Positions 686 to 54,686 of a stretch of DNA of 64,000 nucleotides are shown here, one piece after another (positions within the stretch are counted from its first letter, which is position 1; each line of letters starts with the position of its first letter). A model generated the notes under the pieces. It had not been told where the DNA came from. It was given only the letters and a program-made list of their open reading frames with translations, and did not search any database. The stretch spans positions 5,456,001 to 5,520,000 of the forward strand of contig NC_043010.1 of NCBI RefSeq assembly GCF_006345805.1, in the 5' to 3' direction. A program made the translations under genes and the position numbers. Source of the stretch: Octopus sinensis. Its lineage: Eukaryota.

Positions 686-1848
686 ATATATATACACTCA
701 CACACACCATTCCCACTAATGCATCTGCTTGTTGTTCCCTCACCTGTCTTCGTCTTTTGTTTTTTGTAAATTTTAGCTATTTATATTTATATGTACATCA
801 TCATCATCATCATTTAACATCTGTTGTCCATGCTGGCATGAGTTGGACGGTTTGTCTGGACTGGCACACTGGAAGGCTGCACCAGACCCCAGTCTGATTT
901 GGTATGGTTTTCTACAACAACCACTCCAAGAGTTTAGTGGGTGCTTTTACGTGCCATTGGCACGGGTGCCATTTATGTGATACTGGTATCTGCCATGACT
1001 GTGATTTTGCTTGGCTTGATGGGTCTTCTTCTCAAACATGACATAATGCCAAAGGTCTTGGTCATTGCTTCTGTGAGGCTTGACACTCAGAAAGAACTTG
1101 GTCACCTTGTCTCCATTAGGCCCAAGACTCAAAGGAACCCAGTCACCTCACCTCTGTGAGTACCACTCAAAAGGAACTCAGCCACTACATACATACATAT
1201 ATACATACATACATACACACACACACATACATACATACATACATACATACATACATACACACATACACACATACATACATACATACATACATACATACAT
1301 ACATACATACATACATACATACACACACACACATACATACATATGCACTCACATACACACACACACATACACTAGGGGCAATTTGCTTGACTAAACCCTT
1401 CAAGGTGGAACTTCAACATGGCTGCAGTCCAATGACTGAAACAGATAAATAAAAGAACATATTAATTCATTAAGCCAAACAGTATTGGCTCTCAGTCTTG
1501 ATTACATATTTTTACCATTTAGTCAGGGAAGGAATGGCAGTACCCACAACCCTTTATTTAGGTCTTCTGAGTTCTGCAACAATAAATGAAAAAGTTATCT
1601 TTAAATAAATCTGAATACTTCAATAAACCCCCCACTAAAGGCACCCAGGGACCACAGTAAACTATATCTATGATCCTAATTTCTCATTATCAGAGTCAAA
1701 GAGCACAGAGACAAGCCAAAACAAATTACACTCTGTAACAAAATTTTTATTTTTTCTTGTCTTTGGTCAATAAGTGTTATTTCCTATTTACTTCTATCTA
1801 GAAATCAAAGGAAATCACTACTATTCCCTTCAAACTTTGCTTTTATGA

Positions 1849-2375
1849 CCTGGACATCAATGTTTAGAAAGTGACCTATTTTCCATTACATTTTCCAACC
1901 TGGACATCAATGTTTAGAAAGTGACCTATTTTCCATTACATTTTCCAACCTGGACATCAATGTTTAGAAAGTGACCTATTTTCCATTACATTTTCCAACC
2001 TGGACATCAATGTTTAGAAAGTGACCTATTTTCCATTACATTTTCCAACCTGGACATCAATGTTTAGAAAGTGACCTATTTTCCATTACATTTCGTGACC
2101 TGGACATCAATGTTTAGAAAGTGACCTATTTTCCATTACATTTCGTGACCTGGACATCAATGTTTAGAAAGTGACCTATTTTCCATTACATTTTCCAACC
2201 TGGACATCAATGTTTAGAAAGTGACCTATTTTCCATTACATTTCGTGACCTGGACATCAATGTTTAGAAAGTGACCTATTTTCCATTACATTTCGTGACC
2301 TGGACATCAATGTTTAGAAAGTGACCTATTTTCCATTACATTTGTTTAGAAAGTGACCTATTTTCCATTACATTT
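1849..2375. repeat. 50-bp minisatellite, 10 full units plus a partial unit
   Basis: Unit cctggacatcaatgtttagaaagtgacctattttccattacattt(tccaa/cgtga) at exact 50-bp period from 1851 to 2301. Confidence 0.95.
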
Positions 2376-6271: not shown

Positions 6272-6788
6272 AAACCGCATGGCATATTACCAGTCAATGT
6301 ACGCCACTAACCCAGAAAGAATATGAGATATCATGACAATATAGCAAGGATTGTCCATTGGACACTTTGCAACAAGTATAGACTTGACAGAGCAAAAAAG
6401 TGATATGAACATAAACCCGAAAGCATCATCGAAAATGATAATGCAAAGATCCTATGGGATTTTATGATTCAGTGTGACCATGACATAGAGAATAGGGAGC
6501 CAGACATAGTGTTAATTGAGAAAGAAAGCAAACGATGCTGGATCATAGATATAGCATGCCACGCTGACAATAAGGTATGCGATAAGGAAGAAAGAAAAGT
6601 CGATAGATATAATAGGTTAGCTTGGAAAGTTAAGCATTTATGGTCAATGAAAAAGGTGGTAGTAGTACCAATAAGTGTTGGAGTCCTGGAAACAGGGAGT
6701 AAAAGTCTTGAGAAGTACACGTAACAAATAGGGGCTGCAATAAGTACATGTAACAAATAGGGGCTGCAGAAAGCAGCACTGCTTGGAA
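6272..6788 (+). mobile_element. R4/Dong-like RLE fragment
   Basis: ILWDFMIQCDHDIENREPDIVLIEKESKRCWIIDIAC...VVVVPISVGVL (ORF 6464..6724); preceded by (GAT)n. Confidence 0.85.
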
Positions 6789-13609: not shown

Positions 13610-14564
13610 TTTTTTTCGCTTCTTCTTCTTCCTTCTTCTTCTTCTTCTTCTTCTTCTTCTTCTTCTTCTTCTTCTTCTTCTTCTTCTTTATTTTTTCTTC
13701 TTCTTCTTCTTCTTTCTTCTTTTCTTCTTCTTCTTCTTCTTCTTCTTTCTTCTTCTTCTTCTCTTCTTCTTCTTCTTCTTTCTTCTTCTTCTTCTTCTTC
13801 TTCTTCTTCGTCTTCTTCTTCTTCTTCTTCGTCTTCTCTTCTATTCTTCTTCTTATCTTCTTTTCTTTTTCTTCTTCTTTTCTTCTTCTTCTCTTCTTCT
13901 TCTTCTTTTTCTTTCTTCTTATTCTTCTTCTTTTCTTCTTCTTCTTCTTCTTCTTCTTCTTCTTCTTCTTCTTTCTTCTTTTCTTCTTCTTCTTCTTCTT
14001 CTTCTTCTTTTCTTCTTCTCTTCTTCTTCTTCTTTTTCTTCTTCTTCTTCTTTTCTTCTTCTTCTTCTTCTTCTCTTCTTCTTCTTCTCTTCTTCTTCTT
14101 CTTCTTCTTCTTCTTTCTTCTTCTCTTCTTCTTCTTATTCTTCTTCTTCTTCTTTCTTCTTCTTTTCTTCTATTTCTTCTTCTTCTTCTTCTTCTTCTGC
14201 TTTTCTCTTCTTCTTCTTCTTCTTCTTTTCTTCTTCTTCTTCTCTTCTTCTTCTCTTCTTCTCTTCTTCTTCTTTTCTTCTTCTTCTTCCTTTCTTCTTC
14301 TTCTTCTTCTCTCTTCTTCTTCTTCTTCTTCTTCTTCTTCTTCTTCTTCTTCTTCTTCTTCTCTCTTCTTTTCTTCTTCTTCTTCTTCTTCTTCTTCTTC
14401 TTCTTTCTTCTTATTCTTCTTCTTCTTCTTCTTTTCTTCTTTTCTTCTTCTTTTCTTCTTCTTCTTCTCTTCTTATTCTTCTTCTTCTTCTTTCTTCTTC
14501 TTCTTCTTTCTTCTTCTTCTTCTTCTTCTTCTTCTTCTTTCTTCTTCTTCTTCTTCTTCTTCTT

Positions 14565-14611
<47 letters not shown>

Positions 14612-15150
14612 TTTTCTTCTTCTTCTTTCTTCTTCTTCTTCTTCTTCTTCTTCTTCTCTTCTTCTTCTTTCTTCTTCTTCTTCTTCTTCTTTCTCTTCCT
14701 TCTCTTCTTCTTCTTCTTCTTCTTTTTTCTTCTTCTTCTTCTTCTTTCTTCTTCTTCTTATTCCTCTTCTTCTTCTTTTCTTCTTCTTCTTCTTCTTCTT
14801 CTTCTTTTCTTCTTCTTCTTCTTCTTCTTCTTCTTCTTCTTTCTTCTTCTTCTTCTTTCTTCTTCTTCTTCGTCTTCTTCTTCTTTTCTTCTTCTTCTTC
14901 TTCTTCTCTTCTCTTCTTCTTCTTCTTCTCTTCTCTTCTTCTTCTTCTTCTCTTCTTCTTCTCTTCTTTTCTTCTTCTTTTCTTCTTCTTCTTCTTCTTC
15001 TTCTTCTTCTTCTTCTTCTTCTCTTCGTTTCTTCTTTTTCTTCTATCTTCTTCTTCTTCTTCTTCTTCTTCTCTTCTGTTCTTCTTCTTTCTTCTTTCTT
15101 ATTCTTCTTCTTCTTCTTCTTTCTCCCTCCTCTTCCGCTCTTCTTCTTTC
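13610..15150. repeat. About 1.55-kb degenerate (TTC)n.(GAA)n tract, preceded by (GTC)n at 13558-13600
   Basis: Read directly; the plus strand is almost entirely pyrimidines. Confidence 0.98.
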
Positions 15151-16489
15151 TTTTCTTCCAATCAGGACTCACGCCATTAGCCACAAAGAATAATCACTAA
15201 TTCGAGCCTACTCTAAGCTACTAAGAATGCATGTGGCAACTTGAAGATCCACCCACCACACGTGAGAGACTGGCAGTTGCACAGGTATGGAAGCTACTTT
15301 GTTATCCTCATTCTGTAAACAGTGGCTTTTAACGAGTGGAGAGCTGAACCATCTTGATGTACAAAGGATTCACAATCTAGACTAGGGTCTGAGAGTTTAG
15401 CACACCATAGTGGGTTATACCATGGTTCCTATGCTTTGTGGCAGAAGTAGGAAGAAAGAGTGAGAGAAAGTTGTGGTGAAAGAGTACAGCGGAGTTCACT
15501 ACCCGCCTCGTGGAGCTTAGGTGTTTTTGCTCAATAAACACTCACAATGCCTGGTCTGGGAATCGAAACTGTGTTCTTACAACCGTGAGTCCACTGCCCT
15601 AACCACTGGATCATTGCACCTCCACTCTGATGGTGTTGACATTGATAGCCTCAGTTCAGCCCTGACCAAGGAGACTTACAATGGAACAACATCCTAACTG
15701 TGATCATCCTGTCTTTTTAAGTACATCTAGGATTTTTTTTTAATATCAAGGTGCAATTTTGAGGGATATTTGGCTACTTTTTCTAACAGGTTGGGTGACC
15801 ATGTAGACGAATCACCATGGTGCATGGTATCTAGTATTAGAAAGATGTGTAGTCTGGTGACTGAGACTGGCTGGATTAGTCAATAGAATTTCTTTTGTTT
15901 GTATCTTATTACCAATATCACTAAATCTCTCTCTTGCTCACACTTACTATCAAACTTCTTACACCAGTGTTGCCCATGATTAGTAATTACATCTAGGGAT
16001 ATAAAGACATCCTTAAATTCTTTGCTGGCAGTAACAGCATAATAGTATTGATGATAGAATACAAAATGCAAATATTAGGATCAGTTTTTGAGTTGCATAA
16101 CTTTGATCCTTGTGAAACATAAACTGCATTTGAAATATAATTACAGAAAACAGTTTGATTTTCAGGGATGATTCTAGATATTAAAGACCATACTAAGAAT
16201 AGTCAATTGTTGAAAAAATATACCAACATTTGTTAGAAGCCATAGAGATGGAATAGTTATCACTCTTAATTTATAAGGTTCGTTGTTGACAGAAAATACA
16301 ATTAGAGAATTTATCTTCATCATCGGCTTTTTGAATTGATGTTCACTTGTATGAATCAGATAAATTTTGTTGTGGCAGATTTCCTATGGTTTAATGATCT
16401 TCCTTTTTCTTTCTACTCAATAAAATTGCAACTTAGTCTGAGTTACACATTTTATTTTTGTATGTTTTACAATAATACAATATTATATA

Positions 16490-18510
16490 GAATAGATCCT
16501 GCTTTATAAATCCACTGATAATAAATCCACCCACTTAATGTATCCAAAATGGTGTGGGACGGAATTTTTACACAACAAAATCTATCGTTTAATAAATCCA
16601 AACCATTGCTTAGTAAATCCAATTGTCGCTGCTTCTTCCTAAAGTGTCAACAAGTGGCAGCGAATAAATGAAGTGCTTTTTTTTTTAACTCTTAAATACT
16701 GACAGGTAGGCTCCAGCAGCTACAGCCAGCCAGCTGTCTGTCACATGGTATACTCCATCATTAAAAAATAGATCAATAAATATGTAATAGTTGGTGGTGG
16801 CTGCTGGAGCCTACCACACAATCTTATCATTCAAGTAAAAAAAGTAGGCTCTGGGACACCTCTTGTCAAAATTATGTGCCCTTCTCCTTCATTGGATGAT
16901 GAAGTGTACCATGTGACAGCTGGTTGGTTGTGGCTGCTGGAGCCTATCTGTCAGTATTTAAGGGCAAAAAAAAATACACATCATTCGTGCAGAGAGGCAG
17001 ACACACACACAAATTGTTCAAAATGTTCAAAAGGGAAAGAGAGAGCAGGACAGGTCCGTGACAGAAAACATTAAATCATTAAAACATTACAAAGCTCTCG
17101 AGAAAACAACTCAGTGGGAAGCAGCACAGAGTTTGGGAATCCAGAATTTGCTAAGAATGAGGATGACCTTCGTGTCAAAGAACACAATGGCTGTTCATCA
17201 AAGAGAAAGCGCCAATGAGAGGGAAAGGACCAACAGATAGACAATGTTCTCTATGATTGGTTTCAATTTATTCGCTCAAAAAATGACCCCATCAATGGCC
17301 TGATCCTGATGCACAAAGCCAATACGATTGCTCAAGATGCTGAACATGATTTTGAGGCATCTGAAGGTTGGTTTTTATAGTTTTAGTGTTGGCAAAAAAG
17401 ACATGGAATATGGAATCCCTTTTTACTGTTCTAAAAGGTAAGCTTTGTAGTTCACTAGTTAACATTTCTCTTTAGAGAAACTAAACATTTCATACTTTGC
17501 AGGTGACGCAACTGAAGCTGATGTCAATGGAGTGCATCAATTTTGTGAGGCATCGATGCAGTTTTTGCTGAAATCGTACCAGCCACAGGACATCTACAAC
17601 ACTGATGAAACTGAGATCTACTTTCGTGAATTACCAGGGAATGCACATGTCAGCGAGAGTCGCAAGAAAACTGTGAGAAGCTTTAAAACAGCAAAGAACC
17701 CATGTGACCTTGATGGTGGCCTGCAACAGGAATGGAGACAAAGAAGACTTGCTCTTAATCAGAAAGGCTGGTTCACCAAGATGCTTCAAAAATGTCAAAA
17801 CACCTCCAATTCAGTACAATTTTTCAACCTACGCTTCGATGACAGAAAAAATCTATGGAAGATGGCTCAAATCTTGGAATCATCGTTAGCAGGAATCTGG
17901 AAGACAAGTGGTGGTCCTACTTGACAATTGCTCTCCTCATGTAGTCATCAATGATCTCAAGAATATCACTTTAAAATTTCTTCCCCGCAAAACGTCAGTG
18001 CTGCAGCCCTGTGACATGGGGATAATTAAGACCTTGAAAGCCTACTTCAAACATGAAATGCATGAGATCATTGATGTTATTATGGAAGACACTGAAACAT
18101 GACATTTTTGCCAAAGAAGTTGCCAAGCAGATCACCATTTTGGATGCCATGTACATGCTAAGCATAGCTTGTTAGAAGATTTCTAGCCAGACAATCAAAT
18201 ATTGTTGGCCCAAAGTTGGTTTTGTTTCAGCTGAGGAATCAAATGAAGCCGCAGACATTAATGAAGATTTGTTCCTGCATTTACTGCCGACTGGATTGAC
18301 CAAAAAGCAATTTGAGAACTGGTTGTCCGTAGATGATGGTGCTGTTGTTGATGTTGCTCCAGAGATCATCACTAAAGGAGAAAAACTAGAGGAGATCATT
18401 CATGACATTCGGCAATCTGAGAAGGAAACTGAAGGAGATGAAGATGGCGATTGCAACATTGATGTTGATGAAAAGGTTCCAGAGCCTCCAACACCAGCTG
18501 AAATGAGACA
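16490..18510 (+). mobile_element. Decayed pogo/Tigger-like DNA transposon (CENP-B-type HTH plus DDE_1 transposase pseudogene)
   Basis: Motifs WQKRHGI, YQPQDIYNTDETEIYFRELP and VVLLDNCSPH...FLPRKTSVLQPCDMGIIKTLK across frameshifted ORFs 17532-18102. Repeated ataaatcc motifs lie near the approximate left end. Confidence 0.85.
16688..16964. mobile_element. piggyBac-like MITE nested in the pogo relic
   Basis: Inverted repeats of about 70 bp (16691-16760 versus 16895-16962); ttaa-ctctt...aaggg ends, right TSD decayed. Confidence 0.55.
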
Positions 18511-18514
18511 CTCT

Positions 18515-18736
18515 TTACTCTTTTACTCTTTTACTCTTTTACTTGTTTCAGTCATTTGACTGCGGCCATGCTGGAGCACCGCCTTTTAGTCGAGCAACTC
18601 GACCCCGGGACTTATTCTTTTGTAAGCCCAGTACTTATTCTATCGGTCTCTTTTGCCGAACCGTTAAGTTTCGGGGATGTAAACACACCAGCATCGGTTG
18701 TGAAGCAATGCTAGGGGGACAAACACACACACACAA

Positions 18737-25146: not shown

Positions 25147-25197
<51 letters not shown>

Positions 25198-25574
25198 TAT
25201 ATATATGCATATGTGTGAGGGCGCGTGGCTTAGTGGTTAGGGCATTCGGCTCATGATCGTAAGGTTGTGAGTTCGATTCCCGGCGACGCGTTGTGTCCTT
25301 GAGCAAGACACTTTATTTCACGTTGCTCCAGTCCACTCAGCTGGCAAAAATGAGTTGTACTTGTATTTCAAAGGGTCAGCCTTGTCACTCTCTGTGTCAC
25401 GCTGATTATCCCCGAGAACTACGTTAAGGGTACACGTGTCTGTGGAATGCTCAGCCATTTGCACGTTAATTTCACGAGCAAGCTGTTCCGTTGATCGTAT
25501 CAGCTGGGACCCTCGTCGTCGTAACCGACGGAGTCTTTGATATGCATATATATATATATATGCATATATATATG

Positions 25575-25647
<73 letters not shown>

Positions 25648-26022
25648 TATATATATGCATATGTGTGAGGGCGCGTGGCTTAGTGGTTAGGGCATTCGGC
25701 TCATGATCGTAAGGTTGTGAGTTCGATTCCCGGCGACGCGTTGTGTCCTTGAGCAAGACACTTTATTTCACGTTGCTCCAGTCCACTCAGCTGGCAAAAA
25801 TGAGTTGTACTTGTATTTCAAAGGGTCAGCCTTGTCACTCTCTGTGTCACGCTGATTATCCCCGAGAACTACGTTAAGGGTACACGTGTCTGTGGAATGC
25901 TCAGCCATTTGCACGTTAATTTCACGAGCAAGCTGTTCCGTTGATCGTATCAGCTGGGACCCTCGTCGTCGTAACCGACGGAGTCTTTGATATGCATATA
26001 TATATATATATGCATATATATA

Positions 26023-26069
<47 letters not shown>

Positions 26070-26305
26070 GTGTGTGTGTGTGTATGTTTGTGTGTCTGTA
26101 TTTGTCTCCCCAACATCGTTTCACAACCGATGCTGGTGTGTTTACGTCCTTGTCACCTAGCGGTTTGGCAAAGAGACCGATAAAATAAGTACTGGGCTTA
26201 CAAAGAATAAGCCCCGGGGTCGATTTGCTCGACTAAAGGCTGTGCTCCAGCATGGCCACAATCAAATGACTGAAACAAGTAAAAGAATAAAGAAAGAATA
26301 AAGAA
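25013..26305 (+). mobile_element. SINE family A split by two tandem family B SINEs (about 25214-25525 and 25664-25990)
   Basis: A 5' half at 25013-25147 and A 3' half at 26075-26305; the B copies repeat with a 450-bp period. Confidence 0.88.
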
Positions 26306-27580
26306 TTGTTCTTTAAATATTCAAAGTTTGAAATTGAATATATTCCTGTTGTAATTAATTACATATGATTTCATACATATAGATATTGTAAATCAGCTAT
26401 CAGGAGACTTCGTTGTCTTCAACCATTCTTGAAGTAGAATATTTCCCTGATGTGTGATAAACTCTATGGATGTGAGGGTATCATTTTCTAATGTATATTT
26501 CACTATGTTATACAAACATTTTACTGTTTTGCTATTTTTCAAAAAATATTTTCATTTCTAGATGATGCAGTTTCTGATTAGCTCTAGACTCATTATTATT
26601 TATTATCATTGCCACAAAAAAAAAAAAAAAGAAAAATTAGGTCAAAGAAGACTAAATCTTTGGAATCAATTGTTTTACATTTTTACATGACAATAACTTC
26701 TGTGGGTTTTCTTCAAGAACCCCACAGTTTTGTTGTGTTTATTATTTTTTTTATTTGTAAATTAGCATCATAGAGTTGAAACCTGGAGTCTCCATTGGAG
26801 TCTCCATTGTCATACCAGACACATGAAAATTGTTCAAGAGAGGTGCTAACAGTAAGTGCCTGAACCATAACACATGAAATTGATATTACATACCTGAAAT
26901 CCTTCATTAAATAATAAAAATGGTTTCAAATTTTGCCACAAGTCCAGCAATTTCGGAGGAGGGGGTAAGTTGATTACATCGAACCAATATTCAACTGGTA
27001 CTTATTTTATTGACCTCAAAAGCATGAAAGGCAAAGTCAACCTTGGCAGAACTTAGACACAAGAGCTTAAGGATGAATGAAATGCCACTAAGTGTTTTGC
27101 CCAGATTGCTAACAATCCTGCCAGCATGCCACCTTCTTAATAATAATAATAATAATAATATTGATTTTAAATTTTGGTTCAAGGCCTGCAAGTTCAGAGG
27201 AGGAGTTAAATTGATCACATTGACCTCAGTGTTTAAGTGGTACTTATTTTATTGACCTTTTATTGACCAAAGGTGACCTTGGGCAGAATTTGAACTCAGA
27301 ACACAAAGACAGACGAAATCCTGCTAAACATTTTGCCCGGCATACTAACAGTTCTACCAGCTCACGACCTTTATAATAATAATAATAGTAATAATAGTAA
27401 TAATAATAATAATAATAAAAATAATAATAATGATGATGATAATAATAATAATAATAATAATAGTAATAGACGCCACCCCACTGGCCTACCAATGTATACT
27501 ATGAGTTTCTTTGCCCTAGGAGCCGGGAAGACACTCGGCAAGAAATGGAAGCAAATTTGAAAGGAGAAGAAAAAATGATG

Positions 27581-27623
<43 letters not shown>

Positions 27624-27990
27624 TATTAATAATATGATAGTAATAATACTTATGATAAAAATAATATATTGAAGACTTATTTTCTAAAATATCATTTCTT
27701 CAGAATATGAATAACAGAAAAAATTCTAAATTTCTTCTACATTTTTTTTTGTCATGAAGGGCACACTCAATAGTTCTAGAATCACTGAATAATGACCCAA
27801 AGAATTCAAGGATTATGAATAAAAGAATTTATGCAGACGATCTTTATGAAATTATAGTTATTATCTAAAAACTTTAAAATACACACACACATATTTCAAT
27901 GATTGATTAAAAAAATTTTTTTGTTGTTTTTTTTTCTGAAGTTTTTTTATAAAAAATGTTATTTTCAAAATGCAAGTTAAAAAAATAAGA

Positions 27991-28025
<35 letters not shown>

Positions 28026-28037
28026 CAAAATGTTGTA

Positions 28038-28288
28038 TTATGGCACATTTGGAATTGCTGGTAAAGGTTTGTTTGTGGAAGAAAAGCTATTTTTCAATGG
28101 TAGCTGTTGAAATGTACTGTCTGGTGAAAACGATTTTAATTTCGTATTTTCATCAGTGTTAGTATCTACATTATTGTCTGGTAATTTAGGGCGTGGCACG
28201 GTCCCTGTATTATTATTCCTTGGAAGGGTACTGTCTGGTTTTGGTGTTTCTTCTTCTGGGTGAGTTTCTTGTCTCCTAAGGTAAGGAT
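28038..28288 (-). CDS. Terminal coding exon: DPYLRRQETHPEEETPKP...NKPLPAIPNVP*
   Basis: Lies in ORF 28038..28328(-). Strong acceptor tattttctgtttcttattctgcag ends 28289. Phase 1 matches the upstream exon (G|AT = Asp). Stop TAA at 28040-28038. Confidence 0.72.
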
Positions 28289-29143
28289 CTGCAGAATAAG
28301 AAACAGAAAATAGAATTAAGAAAAACACTTGAAATGTGAAACTTGCAAGAAAATAATGATTTTAGATAGTTTTTTACGGACCTAAGCAATTAGTCTAAAA
28401 GCTCTCTCTTCCACCTATTCTGTCCTCACTTTTCTCATTCCTTTGTAGAATTTTCTCAAAGAAAATTTACAACACAGGTGCAGGAGTGGCTGTGTGGTAA
28501 GTAGCTTTCTTATCAACCACATGGTTCCGGGTTCAGTCCTACTTCGTGGCACCTTGGACAAGTGTCTTCTACTATAGCCTTGGGCCGACCAAAGCCTTGT
28601 GAGTGGATTTGGTAGACGGAAACTGAAAGAAGCCCGTCGCATAAATGTATATATATATGTGTGTGTGTGTTTGTCCCCCCAACATCGCTTGATAACCGAT
28701 GCTGGTGTGTTTACATCCCCGTAACTTAGCAATAGAAACAGATAGAATAAGTACTAGGCTTATTTAGTATCCTCACTTTGTACCTCATTTTTGTCAGCTG
28801 AGTGGACTGGAGCAACGTGAAATGAAGTGCTTTGCTCAAGAACACAACGCGTTGCCTGGTCCAGGAATCGAAACCACAATCTTACGATCATGATGCTGAC
28901 TCCCTAACCACTAAGCCACGCACCTCCACCATATATATATGTGTGTGTGTGTGTGTATACACACACACAACACACACACACACACACACATGCACACACA
29001 CACAACACACATATATACATAAATATATCCATTGCTGTCAAAGTAGCATCCTACAGATTTTGTCATTCATGGCTGTCTTGAACCATGGAATTTATATAGA
29101 AAAACTGATATATTCTGCAAATGAATAATTTCTAACTACATAC

Positions 29144-29329
29144 CTGGTAATTCCTCATAATGTGTCGTGTATCCTTCACTGTATCCACGGCCACTGTCTG
29201 CATAGGATATCGTCGATAAATCACTATAGCAATAGGGTGACGTAAACTTTGTTTCTTTGTCTCCAGCAGTATCAGGGCTTGTGGTGGTTCTTTGAATGGT
29301 TATTTTAGGCTGAAAAGACAATGGAACAG
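29144..29329 (-). CDS. Internal exon (186 nt, phase 1-1): TVPLSFQPKITIQRTTTSPDTAGDKETKFTSPYCYSDLSTISYADSGRGYSEGYTTHYEELP
   Basis: Lies in ORF 29136..29339(-). Acceptor cttattttccactattgtttatag ends 29330 (alternative ttttcag ends 29310, phase 0). Donor G|gtatgt at 29143. Non-repetitive, protein-like sequence that splices in frame to the terminal exon. Confidence 0.7.
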
Positions 29330-29873
29330 CTATAAACAATAGTGGAAAATAAGATGATACTGAAATGTTGTATTATACTTTATTATAATATAACTAGCAG
29401 TATCGCACTATAAACAATAGTGGAAAATAAGATGATACTGAAATGTTGTATTATACTTTATTATAATATAACTAGCAGTATCGCACTATAAACAATAGTG
29501 GAAAATAAGATGATACTGAATGTTGTATTATACTTTATTATAATATAACTAGCAGTATCGCACTATAAACAATAGTGGAAAATAAGATGATACTGAAATG
29601 TTGTATTATACTTTATTATAATATAACTAGCAGTATCGCACTATAAACAATAGTGGAAAATAAGATGATACTGAAATGTTGTATTATACTTTATTATAAT
29701 ATAACTAGCAGTATCGCACTATAAACAATAGTGGAAAATAAGATGATACTGAAATGTTGTATTATACTTTATTATAATATAACTAGCAGTATCGCACTAT
29801 AAACAATAGTGGAAAATAAGATGATACTGAAATGTTGTATTATACTTTATTATAATATAACTAGCAGTATCGC
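29330..29873. repeat. 78-bp tandem array, 7 units
   Basis: Units start at 29330, 29408, 29486, 29563 (after a 1-bp deletion), 29641, 29719 and 29797. Each unit is 64 bp of intron plus the 13-bp Helitron terminus ctagcagtatcgc and a linking a; the last unit runs into the Helitron. Confidence 0.97.
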
Positions 29874-30257
29874 CCGGCGTTGCTCGGGTTTGTAAGGGAA
29901 ATAACTATATAAGCATTTTTAGAGAGTTATAGCCAAAAAATAACAAAAAAATGCATTAAAAATGGAAAAAAATGATGGTAATTTTTTTTTAAATCGTTGA
30001 CTCATCGTAGACATTTTTAGAGAGTTCCTTCCCTTATATAATAGCGGAAAAAATGCATTAAAATGCGAAAAAATGATGGTAAATTTTTTTTTAAATTGTA
30101 GACTCATCGTAGACGCGCGCTAATACCCAGAAGGGCTCGATATGAATCACGACTATAAGATACCCGCTTTTGGTTAAACTGCACTGCAAAATGTGGGGGT
30201 AGTTAGGAATCTAAATCATAGGAGACAGACACACAACTTCACTTTTATATATAAAGA
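29861..30257 (-). mobile_element. Non-autonomous Helitron
   Basis: Minus strand: A|TCTTTATATATAAAAG...CCCGAGCAACGCCGGG hairpin...CTAG|T, inserted between A and T with no TSD. Confidence 0.85.
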
Positions 30258-30274
30258 TTATAATATAATATCTA

Positions 30275-30491
30275 AGGCGGCGAGCTGGCAGAAACGTTAG
30301 CATGCCAGGCAAAATGCTTAGCAGTATTTCGTCAGTCATTACGTTCTGAGTTCAAATTCAGCCGAGGTAAGCTTTGCCTTTAATCCTTTCAGGGTCGATA
30401 AATTAAGTACCAGTTGCGTACTGGGATCGATCTAACCAACTGACCCCCTCCCCTAAAATTTAGGGCCTTGTGCTTAGAGTAGAAACGATTA
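30275..30491 (+). mobile_element. tRNA-derived SINE, family F; relatives at 6014-6200(-), 9357-9585(+), 9647-9830(+), 26925-27135(-), 27165-27372(-), 59593-59790(-), 60960-61155(-)
   Basis: Head ggcggcgagctggcag, B-box gagttcaaattc and core ctttgcctttaatcctttcagggtcgataaattaagtaccag. I recall this core as Meta-domain-like; not verified. Confidence 0.8.
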
Positions 30492-30593
30492 TAATATAGT
30501 ATCTATAATACTATATTTTACATTCAGTTTCTCTTAGATTTTACATTCCACTTCTTTTCATTGCTTTCCATAGTTATTATATCATATTCTATA

Positions 30594-30934
30594 TCTTTAT
30601 ATATAAAAGAGAGGTTGTGTGCTGTCTGTCTCCTACGATTTAGATTCCTAACTACTCCCACATTTTGCGGTGCAGTTTAACCAAAAGCGGGTATCTTATA
30701 GTCGTGATTCATATTGAGCCCTTCTGCGTATTTTTAATGCATTTTTTTGCTATTGTATAAGGGAAGTAACTCTCTAAAAATGTATTATTAATCTCAGAAC
30801 GTAAAAAGCTACAGTAACACCCCCCCCCCTTTGTGGTTAGCCATATTGAGATGGCTATTATACTTTACATCTCTAAAAATGCTTATATAGTTATTTCCCT
30901 TACAAACCCAAGCAACGCCAGGCGATACTTCTAG
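30594..30934 (+). mobile_element. Non-autonomous Helitron, same family, internally deleted
   Basis: a|tctttatatataaaag...cccaagcaacgccaggcgatacttctag|t. Confidence 0.85.
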
Positions 30935-31599
30935 TCTATTATATAATATGTATTTCATATCATATTATGTCATATTATTAATTTCTGGTTCATTTGATTA
31001 TTTATTCAGTTCTTGCATAAAATGTGTAATTTTTATTCAGTGTACATCAGATTTTGCCTCTCCAGTATTGGTTCCTCAGTTGCTCTTCTTCCCCTCCTCA
31101 TCATTCCCCTCACAATTTTCCTCCACTTCTAACTTCACCTTTTCCTCTACCTTCTTCTCGTCCTCCTATGCTTCTCTTCATTCACTTCTTTCACTACCTC
31201 CTTAACAACAACAACAAGAAAAACAACAGCCTGTTTTTGAGCTAGTTAATTTTCTGCCATTAAAAGTTTAGGTGTTTTAGTCATGATCATTCCAAACTGT
31301 GGGTGACAGGATACGAATTGTTGACCTTTACATAGGCTATCTGGTATCTCATCAACTCAGCCTTCCAAACTCTCTACAGTCTATCCATAATCTATAATCT
31401 ATAATATTGTTCTGCTTGTCGCAACATGTGTTCTTGTGTTATGCTTTTAGCGAGCTTAAAACAATTTCAAAGACACAATGAAAATCTTTAACGTAACAAT
31501 TTAAGTTCAAATGTTAAACCTTTGACAACGTTAAATTAAGAATGAAGCTGAAGAATGACTCAAATTCTTTTTAACAATGAAACAAGTGTCATGCTTTAA

Positions 31600-31922
31600 T
31601 CCTTTTGTTACTAGATTTCAGATGAAATACACCGCCTTTATTACTATTAATTTCGAAAATAATGAAGAATTTAGTAAAATAAATTTGTCAATTCTTCTTT
31701 TGCTGGTGTCTCAAATTTAGAGCTGAAACTGGCTCTGGTTCTGAGTACAAATGTCTTGTTTTCATAAGTTTTGTATTAAAATCTTTCACCAAACCTTAGT
31801 CACAATTAATGTTCCTAACACTAGATTAATAATAACTAAGTTATTTTACTAAATTCTTTGTTATATTTAAAGTAATTGAAAGAAACACAGAGCATCTCAA
31901 AATAAATACAGTAACGAAAGGG
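31600..31922. mobile_element. piggyBac-like MITE, same family in the opposite orientation
   Basis: TTAA|TCCTTTTGTTAC...GTAACGAAAGGG|TTAA; about 190 bp are reverse-complementary to 24286-24470. Confidence 0.8.
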
Positions 31923-31956
31923 TTAAGATAGTGTTTGGAACTTAAATTAACGTCTA

Positions 31957-32361
31957 GGCGCAGAAGTGGCTGTGTGGTAAGTAGCTTGCTAACCAACCAC
32001 ATGGTTCCGGGTTTAGTCCCACTGCGTGGCATCTTGGGCAAGTGTCTTCTACTATAGCCCCGGGCCGACCAATGCCTTGTGAGTGGATTTGGTAGATGGA
32101 AACTGAAAGAAGCCCGTCGTATATATGTATATATATATATATATGCGTGTGTGTGTTTGTGTGTCTGTGCTTGACAACCGATGCTGGTGTGTTTACGTCC
32201 CCGTCACTTAGCGGTTCGGCAAAAGAGAACCGATAGAATAAGTACTGGGCTTACAAAAGAATAAGTCCCGGGGTCGATTTGCTCGACTAAAGGCGGTGCT
32301 CCAGCATGGCCGCAGTCAAATGACTGAAACAAGTAAAAGAGTAAAAGAGTAAAGAGAGTAA
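31957..32361 (+). mobile_element. SINE family A, full length
   Basis: Same family as 19687. Confidence 0.92.
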
Positions 32362-32484
32362 TGTAATTTTGATGGAAGGTTTTACTTTGTTTTTATACAT
32401 ATCACTTTCAACAGGAAATTTGTATTATAGAACCAGGAGAAGTTTTGTGAACGTTGGTGTCTAAAGAGTTATATAATCTTGACT

Positions 32485-32898
32485 TTACTCTCTTTTACTC
32501 TTTTACTTGTTTCAGTCATTTGACTGCGGCCATGCTGGAGCACTGCCTTTAGTCGAGCAAATCGACCCCGGGAATTATTCTTTGTAAGTCCAGTACTTAT
32601 TCTATCGGTCTCTTTTGCCGAACCGCTAAGTGACGGGGACGTAAACACACCAGCATCTGTTGTCAAGCAATGCTAGAGGGACAAACACAGACACACAAAT
32701 ACATACACGCATACATATATACATATACATATGTACGACAGGCTTCTTTCAGTTTCCGTCTACCAAATCCACTCACAAGGCATTGGTCGGGCCGGGACTA
32801 TAGCAGAAGACACTTGCCCAAGATGCCACGCAGTGGGACTGAACCCGGAACCATGTGGTTGGTTAGCAAGCTACTTACCACACAGCCACTCCTGCGCC
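32485..32898 (-). mobile_element. SINE family A, full length, inverted relative to the 31957 copy
   Basis: Same family, opposite strand. Confidence 0.92.
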
Positions 32899-33067
32899 TA
32901 TGGAACAAAATTTTTTAAAAATTGAAATCTTTAACATAATGAAACAATGTTAAAAAAGTTTCTAAATGCATGCATCAGAATAGAAACAAGGAAACTGATA
33001 AAATGTGGAACTTTCATTGTCCCACTGTTATATATAAATGAGTGCATCTTCAATTTGGTTTCTGTGT

Positions 33068-33372
33068 CTAGTTAGTTAGTTAGTTAATTTGGCTCAAAAG
33101 CAAATAGCAAGGCCATGTAGGGGGACATGGAGTTAAGTACAGGGTGGTGTTCATGTAAAGAGTTCAGGCCACTTGAGGTCCAGGGAGGCTTTGAACAAAG
33201 CGGTCGTCGGATCTTCACCATCTCGTCTGGCAGCTTGTTCCACGGATCCACAACCCGGACGGAGAAAGCTCCTCTCCTTCGATTGAGATGAAATCGTCGC
33301 AGGTAGAGCTTTTCGGAATGACCCCGCAGCCGACGCTCTGGAGCAGGAGTGAAGAACAGCTCTTTCGAGAGG
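33068..33372 (-). mobile_element. 3' end of a CR1-like LINE with an (AACT)n tail
   Basis: Minus-strand RLRGHSEKLYLRRFHLNRRRGAFSVRVVDPWNKLPDE matches the CR1-clade RGHxxKL...FSxRVVxxWNxLP motif. Confidence 0.8.
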
Positions 33373-33864
33373 TTATACTTTCCGCTATCCTCACCTATCT
33401 TTTATTTTTTATCTTTTAGTTGTTTCAATCATTAAACTGGGGTCATTTCGGGGTATGAACCAACCCCAGTACATCTTTTTCCTTTTTAAAGCTTGATACT
33501 TATTTTATCAGTCTCTTTTTGTCAAACCACTGTACAAGGATGTAATGACACAAGCACCAGTTGTCAAGCAGTGATTGGGGACAAACACACACACACACAT
33601 GATAGGCTCCTTTTGGTTTCCATCTACCAAATTCACACATGAGTTTTTGGTCGGCCCAAGGCTATAGTAGAAGACACTCGCCCAAGGTGCCACACTGTGG
33701 GACTGAACCTGAAACCATGTGGTTGGGAAGCAAAATTCGTACCACACAGCCATGTCTGCACCTGGTCATAAATATTGAGTAATGACCCAAAAATCATGAT
33801 TGCAAATACAAACAGCTGAAATTGGGTTCCTCTGAAAGATCTCTAAAGTAACACTATTTGACAG

Positions 33865-46937: not shown

Positions 46938-47477
46938 CTGGGTTGTCCAGAAAGTTCGTGCCGATTTTTGAAGGAAAGAAAAAGGTCAATAAATACTTGC
47001 CATTACATTTTTAATCAACCAAATATGAACAATTTTGTTGTACAATGCGTCTCCATCTTTAGAATTGAGGGGGTTTTCCTGGCAAAGAATTCATCAAGGT
47101 ATCTTTTTACATCATCCAAGGAATTGAAATTTTTACCATTAAGACTATTCTGCAGAGACCTGAATAAGTGGAAATCCGAAGGAGCAATATCTGGTGAATA
47201 TGGAGGGTGGGGTAACACATCCCAGCCGAGCTGCAGCAATTTTTGTCTGGTTGCCAAAGCATCAAGTGCCGAAAATGAACTTTCTTATCTTCCATTTTAA
47301 AGGGTTACAGAATTAACACAGGTTATAGGAACATAAACCTTCTTCCACGAAAAGATAGCTTAAACTGTGCTCTAAATGGAGGTGTAATAAAATCCTATTT
47401 TATGGACTCAACCATGTTCTAAAATAAGTTGAAATGTAAGCTACTATAAATCGACACGAACTTTCCGGACAACCCAA
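46938..47477 (-). mobile_element. Internally deleted mariner element
   Basis: ORF 47015..47257(-) contains HPPYSPDIAPSDFHLFRSLQNSL. 30-bp TIRs (c/t)tgggttgtcc(a/g)gaaagttcgtg(c/t)cgattt and a TA TSD. Confidence 0.92.
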
Positions 47478-54286: not shown

Positions 54287-54685
54287 TCTTTATATATAAA
54301 AGTGAGGTTGTGTGCTGTCTGTCTCCTACGATTTAGATTCCTAACTACTCTCACATTTTGCGGTGCAGTGTAACCAAAACTGGGTATCTTATAGTCGTGA
54401 TTCATATCGAGCCCTTCTGGGTATTAGCGCGCATCTACGATGAGTCTACGATTTTAAAAACAATTTACCCTCATTTTTTTCCCATTTTTAATGCATTTTT
54501 CTTGCTATTATATAAGGGAAGTAACTCTCTAAAAATGTATTATTAAATCTCAGAACGTAAAAAGCAACAGTAACACCCCCTTTTGTGGTTAGCCATATTG
54601 AGATGGCTATTATACTTTACATCACTAAAACTGCTTATATAGTTATTTCCCTTACAAACCCGAGCAACGCTGGTCGATACTGCTA

Positions 54686-54686
<1 letters not shown>
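54287..54686 (+). mobile_element. Non-autonomous Helitron, same family
   Basis: a|tctttatatataaaag...cccgagcaacgctggtcgatactgctag|t. Confidence 0.85.

What the first reader, a model, noticed from the sequence alone, without database searches (positions are those of the whole stretch)
29330..29873. Seven-fold multiplication of a host 3' splice site fused to a Helitron terminus
Seen: the 78-bp unit runs from the AG of the predicted acceptor (29331-29330, minus strand) through 64 bp of intron into the last 13 nt of the adjacent Helitron. On the sense strand each unit ends in cttattttccactattgtttatag, so six decoy acceptors lie upstream of the real one. Using a decoy in phase 1 reads ATG-CGA-TAC-TGC-TAG, an immediate stop. 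Inference: the array may come from rolling-circle read-through or slippage at the Helitron 3' end. It could act as a copy-number-variable rheostat producing truncated or NMD-targeted transcripts, or shift usage to the alternative AG at 29310.
Basis: partly seen in the sequence, partly recalled or inferred. Interest (0 to 1): 0.7.

Follow-up and report, generated by a model that had tools for sequence, protein, structure and literature searches.

The report
Intronic minisatellite at a Helitron end
A 77-bp piece spanning the tip of a Helitron transposon and the adjoining intron has been copied seven times in a row just upstream of a protocadherin exon in an octopod genome; it looks like an ordinary young minisatellite, and the splice site it was said to multiply is not the one the gene's relative uses.

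Summary
The array is real: 29330-29873, 78 bp x 7.0, with units identical except for one 1-bp deletion. Each unit is 64 bp of host intron, the last 13 nt of the neighbouring Helitron, and 1 junction base.

The Helitron call holds. Three copies in the window begin at A|TC and end at CTAG|T, with a hairpin 12 nt from the 3' end.

The exon is also real. It is the penultimate coding exon of a protocadherin: 76% identical to an Argonauta hians protocadherin over the 138 C-terminal residues, with dN/dS 0.05.

From a phase-0 donor, the TAG gives a frameshift and a stop.

So the array lies at -21 to -564 of the true 3' splice site. It multiplies a cryptic TAG and likely branch-point sequence. It does not multiply the acceptor, whose native context stays intact.

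Most likely this is a neutral, recently expanded intronic minisatellite. It probably began as a non-homologous duplication broken at the base of the Helitron hairpin and then grew by slippage or unequal exchange. Neither a rolling-circle origin nor a splicing "rheostat" has support here, and the latter could not be tested.

The parts
29330..29873 (-). 78-bp minisatellite, 7 units (29330-29407, 29408-29485, 29486-29562 [77 bp], 29563-29640, 29641-29718, 29719-29796, 29797-29873 [lacks the junction base])
   Evidence: TRF score 1081, 99% matches. Unit listing. No other copy of the 64-bp part in the window.
29861..30257 (-). Non-autonomous Helitron-like element, copy A (397 bp). Its last 13 nt (29861-29873) are the Helitron-derived part of every array unit.
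   Evidence: Alignment of three copies (A1). 5' TC, 3' CTAG, flanked by A and T. Exact ends.
29873..29888 (-). Subterminal hairpin CCCGAGCAACGCCGGG of Helitron copy A. The array boundary (29873/29874) lies 1 nt inside its 3' arm.
   Evidence: DNA fold ((((.((...)))))), -4.5 kcal/mol. The energy is not exceptional against shuffles (z -0.14).
29330..29332 (-). It is the proximal member of the seven repeated TAG motifs.
   Evidence: Not conserved in L001. Frameshift and stop from a phase-0 donor. Rough PWM 2.0 bits against 4.1 for the CAG at 29310.
29310..29329 (-). True 3' splice site: pyrimidine tract ctgttccattgtcttttc plus the AG at 29311-29310. It lies outside the array.
   Evidence: Conserved with the Argonauta exon 2 acceptor gtttttccag|CCTAAAATAA. 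Fits the annotated protein junction.
29144..29309 (-). Penultimate coding exon of a protocadherin gene (166 nt, PKITIQ...EELP+G), with donor CCAG|gtatgt
   Evidence: phmmer E 9e-51 to GAB1604432.1. tblastn. 16 synonymous against 4 non-synonymous differences, dN/dS 0.046.
28038..28288 (-). Last coding exon (acceptor ctgcag|AT, phase 1, ends ...KPLPAIPNVP + TAA)
   Evidence: Sequence. Phase matches the upstream donor. Aligned to the C-terminus of P0001.
30594..30934 (+). Helitron-like copy C (341 bp, internal deletion), inverted relative to copy A. Together they form a quasi-palindrome 29861-30934 around a SINE-like repeat.
   Evidence: Inverted arms 95% and 92% complementary. The repeat between them has 5 diverged copies in the window.
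54287..54686 (+). Helitron-like copy B (400 bp), used to define the family's ends. Its 3' flank is (TA)n.

Best explanation
This is a young intronic minisatellite with no dedicated function. I infer this order of events.

1. A 397-bp non-autonomous Helitron inserted, in the gene's orientation, 84 nt upstream of the penultimate coding exon of a protocadherin gene.
2. Much later, a 77-bp segment was duplicated in tandem. It runs from the base of the Helitron's 3' hairpin (29873), through the terminal CTAG and 64 bp of intron, to a TAG 20 nt upstream of the true acceptor (29330).
3. The junction carries one extra base. This is either a 1-nt filler, as in end-joining or template-switch repair, or a C>T change at the CpG that the junction created.
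4. The two-copy allele then grew to seven by replication slippage or unequal sister-chromatid exchange between identical units. That is why all six junctions are the same.

Two local features probably favoured these events. Each unit folds into a hairpin that pairs the Helitron tip GATACTG with host CAGTATC. The array also abuts the outer edge of an inverted pair of Helitron copies.

A tandem duplication leaves one intact copy next to the exon, so the native branch-point zone, pyrimidine tract and CAG acceptor (positions -1 to -98) are unchanged. The six extra units add weak TAG and branch-point look-alikes at least 98 nt upstream. I expect these to be silent or used only rarely. Any use would give a premature stop.

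Shown: the anatomy, the gene, the acceptor position and the Helitron ends. Inferred: the order of events, the mechanism and neutrality.
For: - Array anatomy, near-identity of units and identical junctions.
- The 64-bp part is single-copy in the window, so it is host flank and not part of the mobile element.
- Helitron ends are defined by three copies. These copies differ by 5-18% while the array units show no substitutions, so the array is far younger than the insertion. With the octopus calibration of JC 0.09 = 25 My for the Helitron burst (PMC13282606), about 2 substitutions per My are expected over 544 bp. That suggests roughly under 1.5 My, or ongoing homogenisation. This estimate is rough.
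- The breakpoint lies at the hairpin base.
- Unit hairpin: z -2.3 for one unit, -3.96 for two.
- Inverted Helitron pair.
- The window holds another young minisatellite (50 bp x 9.9, 97%), so such arrays are common here.
- The true acceptor lies outside the array and is conserved. By a rough PWM the decoys (1.0 bit) are weaker than the true site (4.1 bits).
- In the best-studied minisatellite that repeats a splice site (F7 IVS7), the pseudo-sites stay silent (PMC1557585).
Against: - No RNA data, no second individual and no orthologous locus from a close relative could be obtained. Neutrality, youth and copy-number variation are therefore all inferred.
- The true acceptor is itself only moderate by my rough PWM (4.1 bits against 8.8 for the last exon's acceptor). 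The proximal TAG lies only 20 nt upstream of it, so some competition cannot be excluded.
- A breakpoint exactly at a hairpin base and another exactly after an AG may hint at something less random than generic slippage.
- The acceptor assignment rests on a predicted gene model from another genus. That gene may be a paralogue, not the orthologue.
Confidence: 0.72

Rival explanations
1. Splicing modulator. The extra units act as decoy branch points and cryptic TAG acceptors, or as a structured spacer. Copy number would then tune how much productive mRNA carrying the conserved cytoplasmic tail is made, with decoy use giving transcripts that carry a premature stop codon (PTC).
For: - Each unit has yUnAy-like motifs (CTTAT, TTTAT), a modest pyrimidine run and a TAG.
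- Decoy use gives stops in all three phases.
- The PTC would lie more than 55 nt upstream of the last exon junction. NMD sensitivity then follows from the general rule (my knowledge).
- Human intronic tandem repeats are widely associated with splicing variation (PMC10078293; TERT VNTR6-1, PMC11830802).
Against: - The real acceptor and its immediate context are outside the array or unchanged by it.
- The decoys score lower (1.0 against 4.1 bits) and are followed by T.
- The F7 pseudo-sites are silent.
- No expression data are available.
- A very young array is more likely a transient neutral or slightly deleterious variant.
Confidence: 0.12
2. Helitron-enzyme origin. Nicking or abortive processing of the 3' terminus by a RepHel transposase (read-through, re-initiation or rolling-circle slippage) generated the array, which would make Helitron ends hot spots for minisatellite birth.
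For: - The array includes the Helitron terminus, and one breakpoint is at the terminal hairpin.
- Helitron-type elements are known to carry or form tandem arrays (PMC7492417).
- Some Helitron families are reported as recently active in Octopus vulgaris (PMC13282606).
- Copy A also has an internal ~100-bp tandem duplication.
Against: - The cleavage site CTAG|T (29861/29860) lies inside the unit, not at its boundary.
- No 5' TC end is present in the unit, so this is not a concatemer of a circle.
- Copy A is 5-18% diverged from its relatives and was probably immobile long before the array arose.
- Copies B and C have no such array.
- A non-Helitron minisatellite of similar youth lies in the same window.
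Confidence: 0.08
3. The 78-bp repeat is part of a dispersed satellite-like or composite mobile element (a read-through Helitron derivative carrying its own array), not a local duplication of unique flank.
For: Tandem-repeat-carrying Helentron and MITE elements are common in molluscs.
Against: - No second copy of the 64-bp part exists in 64 kb, although three Helitron copies are there.
- Homology among the three copies stops exactly at CTAG.
- The array ends flush with unique sequence 20 nt from a conserved acceptor.
Confidence: 0.05
4. Assembly artefact: the copy number, or the whole array, is mis-assembled.
For: Perfectly identical units are hard to count from short reads. The single 1-bp homopolymer difference in unit 3 could be a read error.
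Against: - At 544 bp the array is within a single long read.
- There are no Ns.
- The junctions are consistent.
- A second, comparable array in the window shows unit variants arranged in an orderly way.
Confidence: 0.03

Closest known systems
Human F7 intron 7 37-bp VNTR (Borensztajn et al. 2006, PMC1557585)
   Same: A minisatellite placed at an exon/intron border, so that each unit repeats a splice-site-like sequence. It is copy-number variable, and its pseudo-sites normally stay silent.
   Different: In F7 the first unit spans the authentic 5' splice site, so the true site really is repeated. Here the array stops 20 nt short of the authentic 3' splice site and repeats only a cryptic TAG and branch-point-like sequence. 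No transposon is involved in F7. Polymorphism was not tested here.
Intronic VNTRs associated with splicing (spl-TRs, PMC10078293; TERT VNTR6-1, PMC11830802)
   Same: Tandem repeats tens of bp long inside introns near exons. Repeat length can correlate with isoform ratios.
   Different: Those cases rest on population and RNA data, and none is available here. Their mechanisms are not decoy acceptors (for example G-quadruplexes in TERT, per its authors).
Tandem-repeat-carrying Helentron/Helitron non-autonomous elements of molluscs and Drosophila (Cg_HINE, DINE-1; PMC7492417)
   Same: A mollusc genome, a rolling-circle-type non-autonomous element, and tandem repeats physically linked to it.
   Different: In those elements the array is internal to the element and travels with it to many loci. 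Here 64 of the 78 bp are unique host intron and the array lies outside the element except for 13 nt. The family here has canonical Helitron ends (TC...CTAG, A|T target), not Helentron ends.
Tandem arrays of whole Helitrons with 3'-truncated inner copies (bat and plant centromeric Helitrons, as cited in PMC7492417)
   Same: Head-to-tail repetition that involves Helitron termini.
   Different: Those arrays repeat the element itself, 5' end included. Here only the last 13 nt are repeated, together with flank.
Generic minisatellite birth by tandem duplication followed by unequal exchange or slippage
   Same: Arbitrary breakpoints, one junction type shared by all units, near-identical units, and hairpin-forming units.
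   Different: Nothing essential differs. The particular features are that the segment straddles a TE/host junction and lies 21 nt from an acceptor.

Membership tests
Canonical Helitron (non-autonomous) | 5' end TC and 3' end CTRR | tested here: met
   All three copies begin TCTTTATATATAAAAG and end ...CT(G/T)CTAG.
Canonical Helitron (non-autonomous) | Short GC-rich hairpin about 10-12 nt upstream of the 3' end | tested here: met
   CCCGAGCAACGCCGGG lies 12 nt from the end in copy A, with a 6-bp stem and one bulge. It is degraded in copies B and C. The fold energy is not exceptional (z -0.14).
Canonical Helitron (non-autonomous) | Insertion between host A and T | tested here: met
   All three copies are flanked A|TC...CTAG|T.
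Canonical Helitron (non-autonomous) | No target-site duplication | tested here: inconclusive
   Copy C has none. Copy B has 4 bp inside a (TA)n run. Copy A is flanked by an 11-bp direct repeat TTATAATATAA (29850-29860 and 30258-30268). Matches of 11 bp or more occur at 0.4% of all positions 398 bp apart and at 4% of those with AT-rich flanks.
Canonical Helitron (non-autonomous) | An autonomous partner encoding Rep/helicase with matching ends | not testable with these tools
   No RepHel ORF in the window (ORF lists). The genome is not available. Collection scans found nothing.
Minisatellite / VNTR | Head-to-tail units of about 10-100 bp | tested here: met
   78 bp x 7.0.
Minisatellite / VNTR | Copy number varies among individuals | not testable with these tools
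   Only one sequence of the locus is available.
Authentic 3' splice site (claimed for the TAG at 29330) | Conserved position, and a reading frame compatible with the upstream exon | tested here: not met
   Homology with the Argonauta gene starts only at 29319. From a phase-0 donor the site gives LFHCLFSLK*. The CAG at 29310 meets both criteria.
Authentic 3' splice site (claimed for the TAG at 29330) | Observed exon junction in RNA | not testable with these tools
   No transcript data.
Protocadherin gene (host) | Sequence homology of the encoded tail to an annotated protocadherin, under purifying selection | tested here: met
   E 9e-51, 76% identity over 138 aa to 'protocadherin beta-13-like [Argonauta hians]'. 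dN/dS 0.046 in exon 2.
Protocadherin gene (host) | Cadherin-repeat ectodomain exon | tested here: not met
   It is not in the window (tblastn). It must lie more than 34.7 kb upstream, outside the window, so the full gene could not be verified. Pfam finds no domain in the tail itself.

The most novel reading that the evidence does not exclude
Helitron 3' ends, with their hairpin and nick site, may be preferred birthplaces of minisatellites in octopod genomes, especially in inverted pairs. This one, lying 21 nt from the acceptor of a conserved protocadherin tail exon, could then be a copy-number-variable set of decoy branch points and TAGs. It would tune how much full-length protocadherin is made compared with PTC-bearing transcripts in a gene family tied to neural wiring.
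Probability: 0.06. Interest if true: 0.55.

Novelty: new member of a known kind. Interest (0 to 1): 0.2.

Why it matters
As it stands the finding matters little. It is one more intronic minisatellite in a repeat-rich cephalopod genome, though a tidy example of a tandem repeat seeded across a transposon/host junction.

It could matter in two cases. First, if the array length varies among animals and changes splicing of the conserved protocadherin cytoplasmic exons. Second, if a genome-wide survey showed that Helitron ends systematically seed such arrays, which would link rolling-circle elements to tandem-repeat birth outside the element.

The practical result of this check is the corrected local gene model: exon 29144-29309, acceptor at 29310, last exon 28038-28288. 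It also shows that the splice site was not multiplied.

Tried and rejected
- Two word-index protein searches with the exon peptides returned nothing. The index evidently lacks these eukaryotic proteins, because the full HMMER search then found the Argonauta protein. I had briefly read the empty results as doubt about the exon and dropped that reading.
- Pfam on the tail: no family.
- Rfam and tRNA scans of 26000-33000: nothing.
- Looking for more copies of the Helitron family or the same locus elsewhere:
  - exact-pattern scans of metagenome and prokaryote-genome collections found nothing;
  - the Argonauta loci L001 and L003 and the Logan contig L002 do not contain the family or the unit;
  - P0002 is not on record.
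- SINE or retroposon in the opposite orientation, suggested by the flanking direct repeat of copy A. I rejected this as the main reading. There is no consistent TSD in B or C, the ends are constant, and all four Helitron end features are present.
- Terminal inverted repeats: none seen by eye in the aligned ends.
- Rolling-circle concatemer: rejected because the unit lacks the 5' end and its boundaries miss the cleavage site.

Full report
**1. The observation**

Tandem Repeats Finder reports a single strong array at 29330-29873: period 78, 7.0 copies, 99% matches, score 1081. Splitting it at the recurring CTATAAACAATAGTGG gives units starting at 29330, 29408, 29486, 29563, 29641, 29719 and 29797. 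They are identical except that unit 3 has AA where the others have AAA.

On the minus strand each unit reads T-GCGATACTGCTAG-TTATATT...CTTATTTTCCACTATTGTTTATAG. That is one junction base, 13 nt identical to the end of the element next door, and 64 nt that occur nowhere else in the window. The last point holds even in a word-7 BLAST.

**2. The Helitron**

The 28-mer CCCGAGCAACGCCGGGCGATACTGCTAG has two further diverged matches in the window, and a self-BLAST finds two more copies of the whole element.

Aligning the three copies with their flanks (A1; exact ends) shows homology that begins at A|TCTTTATATATAAAAG and ends at ...CGATACTGCTAG|T. The copies are:
- A: 29861-30257, minus strand, 397 bp.
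- B: 54287-54686, plus strand, 400 bp.
- C: 30594-30934, plus strand, 341 bp.

The family therefore has 5' TC, 3' CTAG, a GC-rich hairpin 12 nt from the 3' end and an A|T target in all three copies. This is the canonical Helitron signature in a non-autonomous element.

Caveats:
- The hairpin's folding energy is not exceptional (z -0.14).
- The hairpin is decayed in B and C.
- Copy A is flanked by an 11-bp direct repeat that looks like a target-site duplication. A window-wide null gives 0.4% for all positions and 4% for AT-rich flanks. B and C show no consistent duplication. I leave this unexplained.

Helitrons are an annotated, partly recent component of octopus genomes (PMC13282606).

**3. 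The gene**

The minus-strand frame through 29144-29309 is open and ends at a canonical donor, CCAG|gtatgt. About 850 bp downstream there is a strong acceptor...ttcttattctgcag|AT, followed by an 82-codon open frame and TAA. The phases match: 1 nt left over plus 2 nt supplied.

Two word-index searches found nothing. An exhaustive phmmer search with the spliced 138-residue peptide hit an 892-residue protein at E 9e-51 and 76% identity, covering query 1-138 and protein 763-892. That protein is GAB1604432.1, 'protocadherin beta-13-like [Argonauta hians]'.

Its gene (locus L001) has three exons:
- one 2.3-kb exon for residues 1-762, ending in phase 0;
- after a 17-kb intron, a 166-nt exon;
- a last exon.

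The window holds only the two small exons. No cadherin-repeat exon lies in the 34.7 kb upstream that the window covers.

Between the window and Argonauta, exon 2 shows 16 synonymous against 4 non-synonymous differences (dS 0.70, dN/dS 0.046). It is a functional coding exon. The octopus protocadherin expansion (168 multi-exonic genes) is described in PMC6339937, citing Albertin et al. 2015.

The source species was not identified. An octopod is inferred from the best hit and from my recollection of the octopus SINE.

**4. Which acceptor**

DNA similarity between the window and L001 is confined to 29319-29136 (88%). In the pairwise alignment the conserved block starts at tgtcttttcag|CCTAAAATAA against gtttttccag|CCTAAAATAA, and is lost upstream of it.

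The Argonauta protein reads ...TLKEGR|PKINIQ... The window would give ...|PKITIQ... from the CAG at 29312-29310.

The TAG at 29332-29330 would add xVPLSFQ only if the upstream exon ended in phase 1. With the phase-0 end seen in the homologue it gives LFHCLFSLK-stop.

A rough consensus PWM, using my own textbook-style frequencies, ranks the sites as follows:

| Site | Score (bits) |
|---|---|
| Last exon's acceptor | 8.8 |
| CAG at 29310 | 4.1 |
| TAG at 29330 | 2.0 |
| Six upstream copies of the TAG | 1.0 each |

The array occupies -21 to -564 relative to the exon.

The proximal unit contains the likely branch-point zone: TTTAT with its A at 29333 (-23), and CTTAT with its A at 29350 (-40). 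These assignments are by eye. Because a tandem duplication keeps one intact copy next to the exon, the native -1 to -98 context is unchanged.

**5. What any decoy use would do**

Reading from a unit's TAG gives the following:
- phase 0: CDTASYIIIKYNTTFQYHLIFHYCL-stop;
- phase 1: RYC-stop;
- phase 2: a stop as well.

The premise that these sites compete with an identical real site does not hold.

**6. Origin**

The duplicated segment runs from 29873, one nucleotide inside the 3' arm of the Helitron hairpin, to 29330. The Helitron cleavage site (29861/29860) is internal to the unit and no 5' end is present. The geometry is therefore not that of rolling-circle concatemers or read-through products.

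All six junctions carry the same extra base (T on the minus strand). The Helitron has G at that position and the downstream flank has C. This fits a single founding non-homologous duplication with a 1-nt filler. Alternatively, a 78-bp duplication created a junction CpG that later mutated C>T. Either would have been followed by expansion between identical units.

Features that could favour stalling and slippage:
- Each unit folds as single-stranded DNA into a hairpin pairing the Helitron tip GATACTG with host CAGTATC. The energy is -7.1 kcal/mol, z -2.3, with 3 of 200 shuffles as good. For two units z is -3.96.
- The array abuts the outer edge of a quasi-palindrome formed by Helitron copies A and C, which lie head-to-head around a SINE-like repeat. 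The arms are 95% and 92% complementary.

Age: the Helitron copies differ by 5-18% while the units show no substitutions. With the published octopus calibration (JC 0.09 = about 25 My), about 2 substitutions per My are expected over 544 bp. The expansion is therefore probably younger than about 1.5 My, or the units are being homogenised. This is a rough inference that borrows another species' rate.

Base rate: the same 64-kb window contains another young minisatellite, unrelated to Helitrons, at 1848-2343 (50 bp x 9.9, 97%), and a 450-bp x 2.1 repeat. Young tandem arrays are common in this sequence.

**7. Comparison with known cases**

- The nearest documented analogue of a splice site repeated by a minisatellite is the 37-bp VNTR in human F7 intron 7. 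Its first unit spans the authentic donor, and its pseudo-sites stay silent (PMC1557585).
- Intronic tandem repeats associated with splicing are catalogued in humans (PMC10078293; TERT VNTR6-1, PMC11830802).
- Mollusc and Drosophila Helentron/Helitron derivatives carry internal arrays that move with the element, and whole Helitrons can form tandem arrays (PMC7492417).

The present array differs from the Helitron cases in being 82% unique host intron and lying outside the element. It differs from F7 in not including the authentic site.

**8. Verdict**

The repeat, the Helitron and the exon are real. The multiplied 'host 3' splice site' is not the gene's acceptor.

The best-supported reading is a neutral, recently expanded intronic minisatellite seeded across a Helitron/host junction (confidence about 0.7). 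A role in tuning splicing (about 0.1) and a Helitron-enzyme origin (under 0.1) remain possible but have no positive evidence here.

What could not be done:
- transcript evidence;
- population or sister-species alleles;
- a genome-wide survey of this Helitron family. The collection scans and the other cephalopod loci gave nothing usable.

Noticed in passing
window 29850-29860 and 30258-30268: An 11-bp direct repeat TTATAATATAA flanks Helitron copy A exactly, like a target-site duplication, which canonical Helitrons do not make. Copies B and C lack a consistent one. It may be chance in AT-only sequence (4% under an AT-rich null) or an insertion into a pre-existing short tandem.
   Followed up: partly
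window 29861-30934: Helitron copies A (-) and C (+) lie head-to-head around a SINE-like repeat (about 30274-30490, with 5 diverged copies elsewhere in the window). Together they form a ~1.07-kb quasi-palindrome with arms 92-95% complementary. The 78-bp array abuts its left edge, and short tandem repeats (periods 15 and 10, 30941-30978) abut its right edge.
   Followed up: partly
window 29914-30114: Helitron copy A carries an internal tandem duplication of about 100 bp (29914-30012 and 30012-30114, 82% identical). Copies B and C have a different ~95-bp segment in its place, which suggests a subfamily difference.
   Followed up: no
window 1848-2343: A second young minisatellite: 50 bp x 9.9 copies, 97% matches, with two unit variants (..ttccaa.. 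and ..tcgtga..) in blocks. It is not next to a copy of this Helitron family.
   Followed up: partly
window 25148-26069: A 450-bp unit repeated 2.1 times at 98% identity, made of a (TA)n/(CA)n microsatellite plus a SINE-like element. This is a recent local tandem duplication.
   Followed up: no
window 29265-29273 and each array unit: The 9-mer AGCAGTATC (minus strand GATACTGCT) occurs both in the Helitron 3' tip and inside exon 2, where it encodes PDTAG and is conserved in Argonauta. It looks like coincidence, but it places direct repeats between the array and the exon.
   Followed up: no
window 13619-15158: A 1.5-kb (CTT)n microsatellite of about 520 copies. Many further (TA)n, (AC)n and (ATA)n tracts make the window very rich in low-complexity sequence.
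   Followed up: no
window 17463-18556 (+), 47018-47284 (-), 6404-6721 (+), 33087-33401 (-): Degenerate open frames that look, by eye, like pogo/Tigger-type DDE transposase, mariner transposase and reverse-transcriptase C-terminal remnants. They were not tested against any library.
   Followed up: no
window 29310-64000 (minus-strand upstream of exon 2): No cadherin-repeat exon is present in 34.7 kb upstream of the two tail exons, whereas the corresponding Argonauta intron is 17 kb. Either the intron is very long, or these tail exons are used differently from the Argonauta model.
   Followed up: partly
tools (vs 21): The word-index protein search missed a protein (P0001) that shares a 36-residue exact stretch, among others, with the query, while the exhaustive search found it. 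Empty results from the index are not evidence of absence for eukaryotic proteins.
   Followed up: yes
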